Shown in pieces: positions 2,927 through 33,800 of a DNA stretch of 64,000 bases. The translations under genes and the position numbers were made by a program. Source of the stretch: Auanema rhodensis. Its lineage: Eukaryota > Animalia > Nematoda. The stretch is taken from NCBI GenBank assembly GCA_964057225.1, contig OZ059896.1, positions 7,440,001-7,504,000 of the forward strand, in the 5' to 3' direction. Below the pieces are notes generated by a model. The model had not been told where the DNA came from and ran no database searches. It worked only from the letters and a program-made list of their open reading frames with translations. Position 1 is the stretch's first letter, and each line of letters starts with the position of its first letter.

Positions 2927-5900
2927 CTTCAAAGCAAGTTCTTTCCGGGATTCTGCTGATACTCCTCCACTCTTCAGCTGAAAAATTAATTTTTTATATA
3001 AAAAAACAAATATAATATTTTATAAATAAAATTATATTTTTTAAGAAAAACGGTAAATTCTCTTTTTTTTCTAATCAAGTTGTTTCTTGATCCAAATTTT
3101 TAGAAACAAAATGATAAGATGGTTAAATTCGAACATAAAAAACCAAAATACATGAATTTGAAGAAACATGTAAGTGCGAAAAAGAAAAAGAATTGAAGAA
3201 ATAACTGAAATATGAAGTGAACTATGTTAAATAGAAAAGCATAATCAGTTAAGTTTGTATGAGAAATAATTCATAAAACTACTAAAAGCTGTTCATCGCT
3301 GATTTGGGACAAAAGTAAAAGGATTTGTAGAATATTATTATAATAATTAAAAAGAATAAAAATAAAAAGAATAATCAAAACATTTTTCATTTGTCTGAAA
3401 ACCGTTAGCTAAAATAAAATAAGAGAGAAACGCCAAGAAGTAGAAGTTAAGCTAAGCTATTTTGCAAAAAAATGGGAAGATGAAACAACTTTTGAATAAA
3501 GAAGCTGACATTCGTTGATTTAATTTGAAGATATCAATAGTTGACAGCTATCAAGTTAAATTGTTTCAAAAAACATTTTCAATTTGAAAAGTTCAAATTT
3601 GCATTTACTTAGCCACTTCGTAATACTCTCAAGAGAATTATTTCAAGAAACACCACATACAAACTATAGAATAAACCATATGTGGAAATAAAAGAAGTTT
3701 TTAGACAAAACTTTAAAGAATGAAAAAACTCAGACGAAGAATAACGACGAACTCCCAAGTAGAAAGCTATAAACTAGAACAAGCGCATTCAATATATTTA
3801 AAAAAAACGAGATTGATAGTTAGAAGTCGAATAAAAAAAATTTAATCAAATAATTTTTAAAAAAATCTAATATATATATATTTGGAAATAATGAAAAAAA
3901 AAACTAACTTGATCAATTATTTTTGGATAATCTGAAGGATTAGAAATGATCGTAACACGTGAATGATTTTTAGCGGCTGCACGAAGTAAGGCAACTCCTC
4001 CTATAAAAATGAAATGTATAATTGAAACTTTTTTAATTCATAAAGTTTTAAATATTAAAATTATATTTTTATACTTACCAATATCAATATTCTCAATAGC
4101 TTGTTCAACTGTACAATCAGACTTTGCAACAGTAGCTTGGAAAGGATAAAGATTGCAAATAACAAATGAAACGTATTCAAATCCGCAGCGCTGAAAAGAA
4201 ATATTTAACTGAAAATCTTTAACAAGTTTCTATGTTTGACTAAAACTTCGATTATCAAAAGACAGAACATTGTAAACATGTTAATCAAAACTTGCAAGCT
4301 GTGAAAGTCAAAAGTGATAAATGGAGTAGGCGGAATTACGAACTTTTAAACAAGCTTGAAGATGTGAACTTAGACAATCTCGACAAGCCGAAAGAGAAAG
4401 TAAACTAACTCAAAAAGGAAGAATGAAGTTTCTTGTGGAAGAAAGCTTAGAAACTATACTGCCACGAGTTATTCCTGTTTGAATGAACTCGATGACTCGT
4501 AAGAATCAGGAATATTAAGCCTGTGTCCAGGCCGGAAGAATATTGCCAAAAGTTACTTCATAGACATTTAGAAAGTCACTTCAACATTAGGTGACCAGCC
4601 TTTACTTATACATCGTTAAACATAAAGAAAAAAATCATTTACAGTAGTTTATCTTCCGATCAAAAACCTCAGCATCAGCTTAACTTACAGCCAAGCAAGT
4701 TCAACAAGCTAAGATGTGAAAGAACTTCTTGAAATGAAAACAAAAGAGAATGGCAGATTAAAGTAAATGAACCTAAGAAAAATGAATAAATGCTGATTAA
4801 ATGAGAAAATCTTGAGAAAGAATTAAGTAACGTGACTGACAAATTTTCTCACATTCCCAAAAAGACTAAGCTTCTTCTTCGTCTATATAGGCATGGAGAA
4901 TGACGGCTCAAAGATCCGAAACGGTCCTATGGGAAGACAAGGAAGAAAGAAAAAAAGCGAATAACTGAAGTAAGACATAAAAATAGAAAACAATTTATGA
5001 AAACGTCAACATGCAACAATATGTCGAAGATAATCACTTATGAATTTTTCTTAAAAAAAGCGATTGAAAGTAAAAAAATAAGAAAGGTGTAGATGAACAC
5101 AAGAGAAAGAATTTTCTTTTTTTTTGGAAAAAAGTTTAAAAACGTGAATCATTTCACTAATAGCGTTATGAATGCTCTTTAAGTGAACTATGATCCGATT
5201 CGTTCATATGGAGCAGATATAACGCTTCAATTTTCAAGTTGGTGATTGAGCTCAGACCATTACTAGCAAAGTCTATTTCTGATCGAAATAAAAGTCATAA
5301 AGTGTTATTATATGAAGAAATGTATATTATGTGTAAAAAAAAATGAATTGAATAGTCAAATAAAATAAGAAATATCATTTGGAAAAGAACACAATGTTCA
5401 GAAACTTCCAAATTTAGATAACATCTCTTTGTCACCAAAATAAGAAACAAAACGTCTGCACATTGAATAGACAATGGTCTTTCAAGAGTACTAGCTTGAG
5501 TATCTCTTGATGTGTAAATTTGTTGTATATATTGTTGATGAATGTCAAATGACCAGTAGTAACAGAATGAAACCGATGGAAAAGCTTTGCAAAAGGACAA
5601 CAAGCAAAGATACATTGGTCAATTCAAACTTTTCCTCATACATATGCCTATGTAAGCTAATATCTCATTCCAGATACTAGAAAATTCACCAGAACTATCA
5701 TGCTTTGAGGTGAAAAAACTTTGAGAATCATAAGAAGACAACACAAATCCAAAAAACCATTCTAATTTAAGAAAAAGATACGAAAAAGGCAGAATATTAA
5801 GAAACCATCAGTTGCATTTCGTTTGAATTTACTTACTCTTTCATTTTTTTCCAAAAATAACTAACCTCCATATCCTTTTTATCTTCTTCGGTATCACGGG

Positions 5901-30803: not shown

Positions 30804-33800
30804 TCAGAAAACATGTTCCTCTGCACTGGCTACTGTCTGTGTCATTGGTGAAGCTTTCTGATCTGACTCCATTTGCTTGACAGCATTCTTAGCATCTTCA
30901 AATGCTGACCCTGTTGATCCAAGCTGAGTAGCCATGATGCTATCAGAGCAGGTTTTTTGACTGTCAAACACATTCATGACATCCATTTTCAGGACGAATG
31001 GAATAATCTGCTCAACTTGCATGTTGCCAATCAGGCCAGAGAAGAATAGCTCGGCAAGTATTGGCTGTCTGAACCAGCGTAAGCTGGGCAACAATTGCAG
31101 AATGCGAGAATATCTTAAATATAATTAATATAATAATAATAAATAAATGATTGATTACCTGTCAACAATAGCAGACATGTTATGGGAAGTAATATGTGTC
31201 TCGTTATCTTCAGATGTTGAATCATCGTTTAGGGAGACCATTGAAGCAATATGATCATACAACTCAGTACAGGCGGTTGTGTTTGTCATTCTCATCTCAG
31301 ATAAGTTTGTCAAAGATGGAATATCTAGAATATATTTGATAAGATGATTTTCGTCAACTGAAATCTACAATCTTACCATTTGCAGTGAATGAGATCAACT
31401 TCAAATATGCAAATTCAATGTTGCTTAGCTTTAGTTCTTCAAACCGTCGAACAAGAGTACGTAAATATCCGATTTGTTCATGAACTTCATCAAATTTAAT
31501 GGAAGGAAGTTGCTCTAAACAAGTAAAAACATTAATTTAAATTCTCATTTTTGAAAACATACTTATTCTTAAGTAAGCAGTTAGTTGACAATTCATTGTT
31601 TCTAGCATACGAATGAAATCAATTTTGTTGGCTGATTGCATAAGACCAAGCACAAACAGATCACACCATTTCATTTTCATCACACTTTCCAATGTAGATG
31701 CTCTATAAAAAAAAAATAAATATGATGTAAGTTGCAGATGTTATTGAAATTTATTTTGATTTGCAAAACGGTCAGAACTTCTTAGAGGATTGCCTTTCAG
31801 TGACTCTCAAGGGCAAGTTTTAACATCATACCGCCGGATTCGAACCAGTGACTTACTGGTGACAACGTTCGCTTTTAACCACTAGGCCAAGCAACACTTG
31901 ATAATAGCATTGAAGAACAAACCTGAGACCCATTCGAACATCTTTCATCCAATGAACAGAGAGAAACAGAAGTCGACTGGCAGTTTCACAAATAAATTGA
32001 AGATTCATTTCAGGAGATTGAGGAACGGGAAGTTCGAAGCGTGATCGTTCTCGGTTAAAGATGGGACCATCTTCACTGACACTGGATGCTGTGTTAGAAG
32101 ATGATGGGGAGGCAGAGGGGGCCAATCCGATGACGGTCATGACATCAATTCCAGACTCGTCTTCTCCAATAGATTCCTAGAACAAAATTCATGAATTCAG
32201 ATGTTTAACCCATAATAAGAATATCAAAGATCATAATAAAACATACTCGTTTGATGGAATAATCTGTTTGTGGTGAACTAGAATTTGGACGAATCAAACT
32301 GTTTGGTGATGATGAATTCATTTCATGGTCTTGACTTGTGATTTCTTCAACTCCCTTAAGAAGACGAGCGGATGAACGGTCTTTCTCTTGCTCTGACTTG
32401 ACAATAGCGAGAAGTCCAAGCATTTGTCCTGATAATGGCTGAAAGAGAGAAACAAATAAGTTAAGTAGTTTCTAGCAGAGCAAAATAAAAGTATAAAACT
32501 TACAGTAGATGTTCTAGAGCTATGAACCATTGTGGGAGCAGTTGAACTGGAATCACTCATTTGTTGAACTGGACGACGTTCCGCTTGAACCGCTGAAAAT
32601 GCTAAATTAGTCATATTCTTGTTGAAATTTCTGTTTATATTTACAACTTTTTGTATTTTGTTCAGCTGAACTTTCAATTTGTTTCTCAACATTTCAACTT
32701 TTGAAATGAAATATTAATAGCCCCTGCCTACTCAGATTTCGAATCTATGGACAGATTGAATGCGAGCAAAGAGGTGCCGGATCCCGGCAATCATGCCCTC
32801 TGCCCTTAGGTGATTCCTCCTTCCTGCTTTCGCTTTCTCACTGGAACATCCTGCATGCAAATTAATTGGCCGCCATCGTCTTTCTCTCTCATCTCTCACT
32901 TGAAATTCTACTTTCCTTATATTATAGATAAAGTTTACATTCAAGCTGTTATAAACACATACATATCTATTATATAATATATGAATTATGTATATTATAA
33001 ACTATATATCATATAGTTAATTACAATTGATTATATTGTTCTTAACTATATATATATATATAATATCATAATTACTATAAAAATAAAAATGTATATTGTT
33101 TCGTCATTGTGGTGGAAATGGATAATCGAAGACTATTCCGGTCGATAAGCTAACAAATCCGTTATTATGAATTTGAGCTATAAGCTCTCTTATCTAGTTG
33201 CTCGATTACTTATTCAACGGTAAAATTAATCTAATATTTCATTCTCAGATAGTTTTAGTTTTGGTTTATCGTAGTTTTATTTTATTATTCTTATTCCAAC
33301 GATTAAACTTTGTATTTTTGCCAAAGTCTTAAGTTCTTCAACAAATTTCATGTTTGTCTCTTAAAAATAGAAAGTTAGAACTTCTATTAACTATTATATA
33401 CTATACGACAATTCAGACGTCAAAATACAATTTTAATTTTTTACCAAAAAAATTCTGGAAAGCTGTTGAATGGGGGGGAAAGCGTTTCTGGATAGCAATC
33501 AAGAGAAAGCACATCAGCATTTTCTTTTGAATTGACTTTTAAGATGTTATGTTGATAGATGAAGCTTAAAGAACAAAAACAACTCATTATAGTGTGGTTC
33601 ACGGAACAAAACCCAAAGGTAAAGAAAACATTTAATTGAAAATACGATAAATATGGAATGTAAAGCCAATTAATCAAGTCTCTCGAGATCGAAAACAGCC
33701 AAAACGAAAGTAAGAATATGTAAAACAAATTGAAAATTAGTATTTCATATGCTTTAACAGTTCGAATGATGACTTTTAAGATTAATGATCTTTATGTTTT

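What the first reader, a model, noticed from the sequence alone, without database searches (positions are those of the whole stretch)
31765..31896. Self-contained Pol III 'pseudo-tRNA + C/D snoRNA' cassette hidden in an nhr-41 intron
Seen: a 220-bp intron, among ~45-bp neighbours, contains in order on the minus strand a perfect A box, a perfect B box, a C box, a D' box, a 13-nt guide complementary to 18S AACUUCUUAGAGG, a D box, a terminal stem and TTTT. The tRNA-like part has lost anticodon and acceptor pairing but kept both promoter boxes, and its 3' end overlaps the snoRNA 5' stem. Known: nematode C/D snoRNAs can be driven by upstream tRNA-like A/B-box motifs, and plants have dicistronic tRNA-snoRNAs. 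By the D+5 rule the target is the second U of CUUC, the site guided by vertebrate U61/SNORD61 (human Um1442, from memory). Inference: a tRNA gene was exapted as a promoter or processing leader, so a housekeeping snoRNA is expressed independently of its developmentally regulated host. The D' guide has only a short 8-nt match (UGACUCUC) to LSU rRNA, which is weak.
Basis: partly seen in the sequence, partly recalled or inferred. Interest (0 to 1): 0.85.

Follow-up and report, generated by a model that had tools for sequence, protein, structure and literature searches.

The report
Nematode U61 snoRNA with tRNA-like promoter
This is a real small guide RNA gene (the worm version of U61/SNORD61, which directs one ribose methylation on 18S ribosomal RNA) sitting behind a decayed tRNA that serves as its promoter inside an intron, a layout already described and tested at dozens of C. 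elegans loci.

Summary
Observation largely confirmed. The 220-nt nhr-41 intron (spliced in RNA contigs) of an Auanema nematode holds exact A and B boxes 32 nt apart, a 67-nt box C/D snoRNA matching Rfam snoU61 (E 2.6e-7, below the gathering score) and TTTT. Its guide pairs 13 bp plus one G-U with rhabditid 18S, pointing at the U equivalent to human Um1442. The layout is the UM2 class known from C. elegans (40 snoRNA loci; Li 2008, He 2006), and this scan has noted many more such cassettes in this genome. No small-RNA, ChIP or methylation data were available, so Pol III transcription is inferred. Verdict: new member of a known kind.

The parts
31703..31922 (-). 220-nt intron of nhr-41 (TR2/TR4-type nuclear receptor) that hosts the cassette, same strand as the host
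   Evidence: Joint 31702-31923, CT..AC, in RNA-like contigs X10 and X13; flanking exon 97.6% identical to Auanema sp. JU1783 NHR-41-like protein
31832..31896 (-). tRNA-derived leader (nominal tRNA positions 1-65), UM2-type
   Evidence: Ungapped register with C. elegans tRNA-Glu, 40/72 identical, 15/32 between the boxes, p about 0.003; no tRNA call
31879..31889 (-). A box TGGCCTAGTGG
   Evidence: Only exact match to TRGCNNAGYGG in the window
31859..31865 (-). Anticodon-loop remnant TTGTCAC (anticodon position reads GTC, Asp); stem lost
   Evidence: 6 of 7 identical to the tRNA-Glu loop in the same register
31836..31846 (-). B box GGTTCGAATCC, 32 nt after the A box
   Evidence: Only match in the window at up to 1 mismatch; A+B pair 0 of 100 shuffles
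31768..31834 (-). Box C/D snoRNA, U61/SNORD61 orthologue, about 67 nt, with terminal stem GCGGU/ACCGU
   Evidence: Rfam RF01170 38.5 bits, E 2.6e-7; orthologues in five strongylids
31823..31829 (-). Box C (AUGAUGU)
   Evidence: UGA.G conserved in orthologues
31807..31810 (-). Box D-prime (UUGA), revised assignment
   Evidence: Aligns with NUGA/GAGA of strongylids; forms a 4-bp stem II with C-prime
31794..31800 (-).
   Evidence: Aligns with NUGAUCG of strongylids; K-loop register pairs in 5 of 6 species
31776..31789 (-). 18S guide: 13 Watson-Crick pairs plus one G-U; fifth base upstream of box D (31780) faces the second U of CUUC
   Evidence: Pairing with rhabditid-type 18S loci L002, L012, L021, L024; invariant in six species
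31772..31775 (-). Box D (CUGA)
   Evidence: invariant
31765..31768 (-). TTTT, putative Pol III terminator, 3 nt after box D
   Evidence: four T suffice at C. elegans UM2 loci (PMC2527325); a related species' contig in run X14 also has TTTT right after box D
31923..32176 (-). Upstream nhr-41 exon
31563..31702 (-). Downstream nhr-41 exon

Best explanation
A UM2-type, self-contained Pol III gene for the nematode U61 snoRNA. TFIIIC binds the A and B boxes of a decayed tRNA gene (probably Asp/Glu class); Pol III starts about 9-13 nt upstream of the A box (about 31898-31902), reads through leader and snoRNA and stops at TTTT, giving a 134-138-nt precursor. The C/D proteins bind the C/D and C-prime/D-prime K-turns; the unstructured leader is removed (most likely by 5' trimming or a cut inside the leader, not by RNase Z at the tRNA 3' end) to leave a 67-nt snoRNA. 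Its single guide directs fibrillarin to 2'-O-methylate the 18S uridine equivalent to human U1442. Expression is thus uncoupled from nhr-41. Shown here: sequence elements, spliced intron, family match, target pairing, orthology. Inferred from C. elegans work: polymerase, start site, precursor, processing, methylation.
For: Exact A and B boxes 32 nt apart, 0/100 shuffles; C. elegans UM2 has 33-nt spacing, start 9-13 nt upstream of box A and 70 nt upstream of the mature 5' end, both boxes needed, TTTT termination, joint UM2-snoRNA precursors, leader never recovered alone (PMC2527325); intronic UM2 loci are uncorrelated with hosts and far more abundant (PMC1474057); 52 snoRNA genes carry TFIIIC and Pol III in C. 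elegans (PMC6950938). Boxes stay exact while acceptor and anticodon stems have decayed, which points to selection on the promoter. Guide and D box invariant in six species. TTTT also follows box D in another species' contig.
Against: No small-RNA reads, precursor, ChIP or methylation data (only contigs of spliced mRNA were available). The snoRNA is on the host strand and its D box lies 69 nt from the 3' splice site, so release from the spliced intron is also possible. Strongylid orthologues in the same intron lack an upstream B box, and two lack a nearby TTTT. Rfam score is below the family's gathering threshold.
Confidence: 0.8

Rival explanations
1. Ordinary intron-encoded snoRNA: it is cut out of the debranched nhr-41 intron, and the tRNA-like leader is a recent insertion or relic with little role in expression (or only an additional route).
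For: Same strand as host; D box 69 nt from the 3' splice site; the snoRNA has stayed in this intron in five strongylids without a full A+B leader, and Necator and Parelaphostrongylus have no TTTT within 300 nt.
Against: Both boxes are exact, correctly spaced and followed by TTTT while the rest of the tRNA has decayed; a transcription-factor host is unlikely to supply enough snoRNA (inference); many such cassettes in this genome were noted antisense to their host or in arrays (unchecked notes).
Confidence: 0.12
2. True dicistronic tRNA-snoRNA as in plants: the leader folds as a tRNA and RNase Z (HOE-1) cuts at its 3' end to free the snoRNA.
For: Leader is collinear with a tRNA, with partial D and T stems; plant tRNA-snoRNA precedent cited in PMC2527325.
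Against: Acceptor stem pairs 2 Watson-Crick + 3 G-U of 7 with a break, anticodon stem lost, and nominal position 73 (31825) lies inside box C, so a canonical cut would destroy the snoRNA; fold z-scores -0.2 to -0.9; the released leader was never detected in C. elegans.
Confidence: 0.05
3. Dead or silent copy: a tRNA pseudogene or TFIIIC-only site lying next to a non-expressed snoRNA remnant.
For: No RNA evidence for the small RNA; Auanema sp. JU1783 lacks the unit in this intron; C box has a mismatch.
Against: Guide, D box, terminal stem and K-loop are intact and match five orthologues in the same intron, while the D-prime side has drifted freely.
Confidence: 0.03

Closest known systems
C. elegans UM2 snoRNA loci (Deng et al. 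2006; He et al. 2006, PMC1474057; Li et al. 2008, PMC2527325), e.g. CeN37, CeN39, CeN53, CeN55, CeN119
   Same: A and B boxes about 32-33 nt apart upstream of the mature snoRNA, start-to-mature distance 64-70 nt, TTTT end, often intronic (20 intronic pairs studied).
   Different: Different species and snoRNA; here the tRNA register and anticodon-loop remnant can still be read; transcription not tested.
SNORD61 clan CL00067 (RF00270 SNORD61, RF01170 snoU61): human Um1442, Arabidopsis Um1381 (PMC3511168)
   Same: Identical D-side guide and D box; single functional guide; short internal stem around D-prime/C-prime as in the snoU61 consensus.
   Different: Shorter (67 nt), score below the gathering threshold; own tRNA-like promoter, which none of 85 guide-matching metagenome sites showed.
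Strongylid U61 in the orthologous nhr-41 intron (Necator, Haemonchus, Cylicocyclus, Parelaphostrongylus, Heligmosomoides; found here)
   Same: Same intron, same guide, D box, terminal stem and D-prime/C-prime arrangement; an A-box-like word upstream.
   Different: Leader is only a D-arm-like hairpin (TGGCGCAGNG invariant) 20 nt before box C; no upstream B box; a B-box-like GATCGATTC lies inside the snoRNA in 4 of 5; TTTT nearby in only 3 of 5.
Plant dicistronic tRNA-snoRNA genes and yeast SNR52 (as cited in PMC2527325)
   Same: Pol III type-2 promoter placed in a transcribed leader ahead of a C/D snoRNA.
   Different: Plant leaders are intact tRNAs released by RNase Z; here no tRNA can mature. 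Closer to SNR52, whose leader only carries the boxes.

Membership tests
Box C/D snoRNA, SNORD61 clan | Boxes C and D with terminal stem | tested here: met
   (C box one mismatch)
Box C/D snoRNA, SNORD61 clan | Guide of 10 or more bp to 18S with D+5 on the U equivalent to human U1442 | tested here: met
   13 WC + 1 GU with rhabditid-type 18S; guide identical to the snoU61 consensus; the species' own 18S was not available
Box C/D snoRNA, SNORD61 clan | Rfam model score at or above gathering threshold | tested here: not met
   38.5 bits against 55 for RF01170, E 2.6e-7; the model is built from other lineages, so this lowers formal Rfam membership, not orthology
Box C/D snoRNA, SNORD61 clan | Expressed, fibrillarin-bound RNA and 2'-O-methylation at the target | not testable with these tools
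   Only assembled contigs of longer RNA
UM2 Pol III snoRNA loci | A and B boxes about 33 nt apart directly upstream of the snoRNA | tested here: met
   32 nt; 0/100 shuffles
UM2 Pol III snoRNA loci | Oligo-T (4 or more) terminator just downstream | tested here: met
   TTTT 3 nt after box D
UM2 Pol III snoRNA loci | Leader-containing precursor, TFIIIC/Pol III occupancy, host-independent expression | not testable with these tools
   No raw small-RNA or ChIP data
Dicistronic tRNA-snoRNA (plant type) | Leader folds as a complete tRNA with its 3' end upstream of the snoRNA | tested here: not met
   No ARAGORN or Rfam tRNA call; acceptor and anticodon stems broken; position 73 inside box C
Double-guide C/D snoRNA | Conserved second guide upstream of D-prime | tested here: not met

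The most novel reading that the evidence does not exclude
One snoRNA gene has stayed in the same nhr-41 intron since the Auanema-strongylid ancestor while its Pol III promoter was rebuilt: Auanema uses a full tRNA-derived leader with both boxes upstream, whereas strongylids use a minimal A-box hairpin plus a B box embedded in the mature snoRNA, overlapping box C-prime and the guide start, 44-45 nt after the A box. That would be a compact promoter layout I did not find described for nematode snoRNAs, and a natural experiment in promoter turnover.
Probability: 0.3. Interest if true: 0.5.

Novelty: new member of a known kind. Interest (0 to 1): 0.24.

Why it matters
As found, it is one more UM2-type snoRNA gene: it extends the C. 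elegans layout to Auanema and annotates a nematode U61 orthologue that Rfam's threshold misses. The comparative result is the more useful part: a fixed intron position with two different leaders, and loss in a congener, offers a tractable case for asking how snoRNAs switch between host-dependent and Pol III expression and how tRNA-derived promoters are gained, shortened or lost.

Tried and rejected
Rfam at gathering threshold and ARAGORN: nothing in the window. Folding gives no significant structure. Heterorhabditis as source rejected (75% identity); Auanema fits. Second guide to LSU or SSU rejected. RNase Z model rejected on geometry. Metagenome scan with the nematode-type 3' stem: 0 hits; with the bare guide: 85 sites, none with A/B boxes, taxa unknown. 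A profile of the six orthologues found no copy in nhr-41 loci of C. elegans, C. auriculariae, Diploscapter, Mesorhabditis, Pristionchus or Auanema JU1783, and no second copy in the window. Covariation of the strongylid leader hairpin is not significant with five sequences. Deng 2006, Zemann 2006 and Ikegami and Lieb 2013 were not held, so the name of the C. elegans U61 orthologue and its promoter could not be checked. Of the 26 rRNA loci, 21 carry a signature that may be vertebrate or human; they were left alone and not compared.

Full report
Observation. Each box alone could be chance at one mismatch, but the exact pair at tRNA spacing occurs once in 64 kb and in 0 of 100 shuffles. Two RNA-like contig sets skip exactly 31703-31922 (220 nt, GT..AG on the minus strand); neighbouring introns are 45-70 nt. 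The upstream exon is 97.6% and the downstream exon 89% identical to the NHR-41-like protein of Auanema sp. JU1783, and relatives are named NHR-41 in Caenorhabditis. The window is therefore another Auanema species; an earlier scan note names A. rhodense, which I did not test further.

The snoRNA. Rfam snoU61 (RF01170, clan CL00067) matches 31768-31834 at 38.5 bits, E 2.6e-7, below the gathering score of 55. Rhabditid-type 18S fragments found as contaminants in bacterial assemblies pair with the guide over 13 Watson-Crick pairs plus one G-U, and the fifth base before box D faces the second U of CUUC. The U61 clan targets human Um1442 and Arabidopsis Um1381 and traces to the last eukaryotic common ancestor (PMC3511168). 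Twenty-one other loci had a signature that may be vertebrate or human and were left alone.

Internal boxes revised. Five strongylid orthologues show NUGA (or GAGA), a 4-5-nt loop, then NUGAUCG just before the guide. The window aligns as UUGA, GAGUCA, CUGAAAG, and this register gives tandem G-A pairs closed by a paired stem in 5 of 6 species, four Watson-Crick pairs in the window. The segment before the true D-prime differs in all six species, with only 7-9-nt matches at unrelated rRNA sites (most of the LSU was not available). This is a single-guide snoRNA.

The leader. No tRNA is called and folding is not significant. Yet the leader lies in ungapped register with a C. elegans tRNA-Glu: same 32-nt A-B distance, 40 of 72 identities, 15 of 32 between the boxes (p about 0.003) and a loop TTGTCAC with GTC (Asp) at the anticodon position. 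It is a decayed tRNA gene, probably of the Asp/Glu class (only one tRNA was at hand for comparison). Acceptor and anticodon stems are broken, the T stem keeps 4 of 5 pairs, and the nominal position 73 falls at 31825, inside box C. A canonical RNase Z cut would thus destroy the snoRNA, so the plant dicistronic model does not fit.

Mechanism. The anatomy matches C. elegans UM2 loci point by point: sub-motifs 33 bp apart resembling boxes A and B, found at 47 ncRNA loci of which 40 are snoRNAs; both boxes needed in vivo; start 9-13 nt upstream of box A and 70 nt upstream of the mature end for CeN37; joint precursors cloned at four loci; leader never recovered alone; termination at TTTT (PMC2527325). 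Twenty intronic UM2 loci are uncorrelated with, and far more abundant than, their host mRNAs (PMC1474057). ChIP places TFIIIC and Pol III on about 50 snoRNA genes (PMC6950938; PMC5364375). Applied here: a 134-138-nt Pol III precursor trimmed to 67 nt. This is inferred; no small-RNA data were available, and release from the spliced intron is not excluded (same strand, box D 69 nt from the 3' splice site).

Relatives. The exact guide and D box sit between the same two exons in Necator, Haemonchus, Parelaphostrongylus, Cylicocyclus and Heligmosomoides, and a contig of another species in run X14 has the guide downstream of the same exon, followed by TTTT. The unit is absent from nhr-41 in C. elegans, C. 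auriculariae, Diploscapter, Mesorhabditis, Pristionchus and, notably, Auanema JU1783, whose intron is about 49 nt. The position is therefore older than the Auanema-strongylid split and was lost in JU1783 (inference from presence and absence; no tree was built). The strongylid leader differs: an invariant TGGCGCAGNG in a D-arm-like hairpin about 20 nt before box C, no upstream B box, and GATCGATTC (fits GWTCGANNC) inside the snoRNA 44-45 nt after the A-like box in 4 of 5 species. For an internal B box: the 5' strand and loop bases of the hairpin are invariant while the 3' strand varies, and spacing is constant. Against: C-prime pairing and guide extension can explain the word, Heligmosomoides breaks it, covariation is not significant, and two species have no TTTT within 300 nt. 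None of 85 guide-matching metagenome sites had A/B boxes.

Verdict. Real feature, correctly spotted, of a known kind. The scan has noted at least eight similar cassettes elsewhere in this genome (unchecked notes, two of them also filed as known). New member of the UM2 class and of the U61 clan; interest 0.24, most of it from the differing leaders in orthologues.

Noticed in passing
L027:20161-20246, L030:16442-16527, L031:26176-26259, L036:28747-28831, L037:5333-5417: Strongylid U61 genes in the orthologous nhr-41 intron: invariant A-box-like TGGCGCAGNG hairpin directly before the snoRNA and a B-box-like word inside it (4 of 5). From memory, both words resemble the boxes of initiator tRNA-Met; not tested.
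   Followed up: partly
L034:10446-10494: Auanema sp. JU1783 has a bare intron of about 49 nt at this position; its U61 must have moved or been lost.
   Followed up: partly
L028 (C. elegans nhr-41 locus): One tRNA-Glu(TTC) at 2928-2999 (minus) and about a dozen further A-box/B-box-like pairs, many 40-41 nt apart, in other introns of C. elegans nhr-41; probably a tRNA-derived repeat.
   Followed up: no
window 31770-31790 and 32054-32184, run X14: A 2.6-kb contig of another, unnamed nematode carries the exon at about 78% identity and the U61 guide 378 nt away, followed by TTTT; its leader could not be read.
   Followed up: partly
window 31811-31818: The segment before the revised D-prime (ACUUGCCC) matches 18S GGGCAAGU over 8 nt, but it is not conserved in orthologues and can pair internally with GGCAA; probably chance.
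   Followed up: yes
L002, L012, L021, L022, L024: Several bacterial genome assemblies contain rhabditid-type rRNA contigs as contaminants.
   Followed up: no
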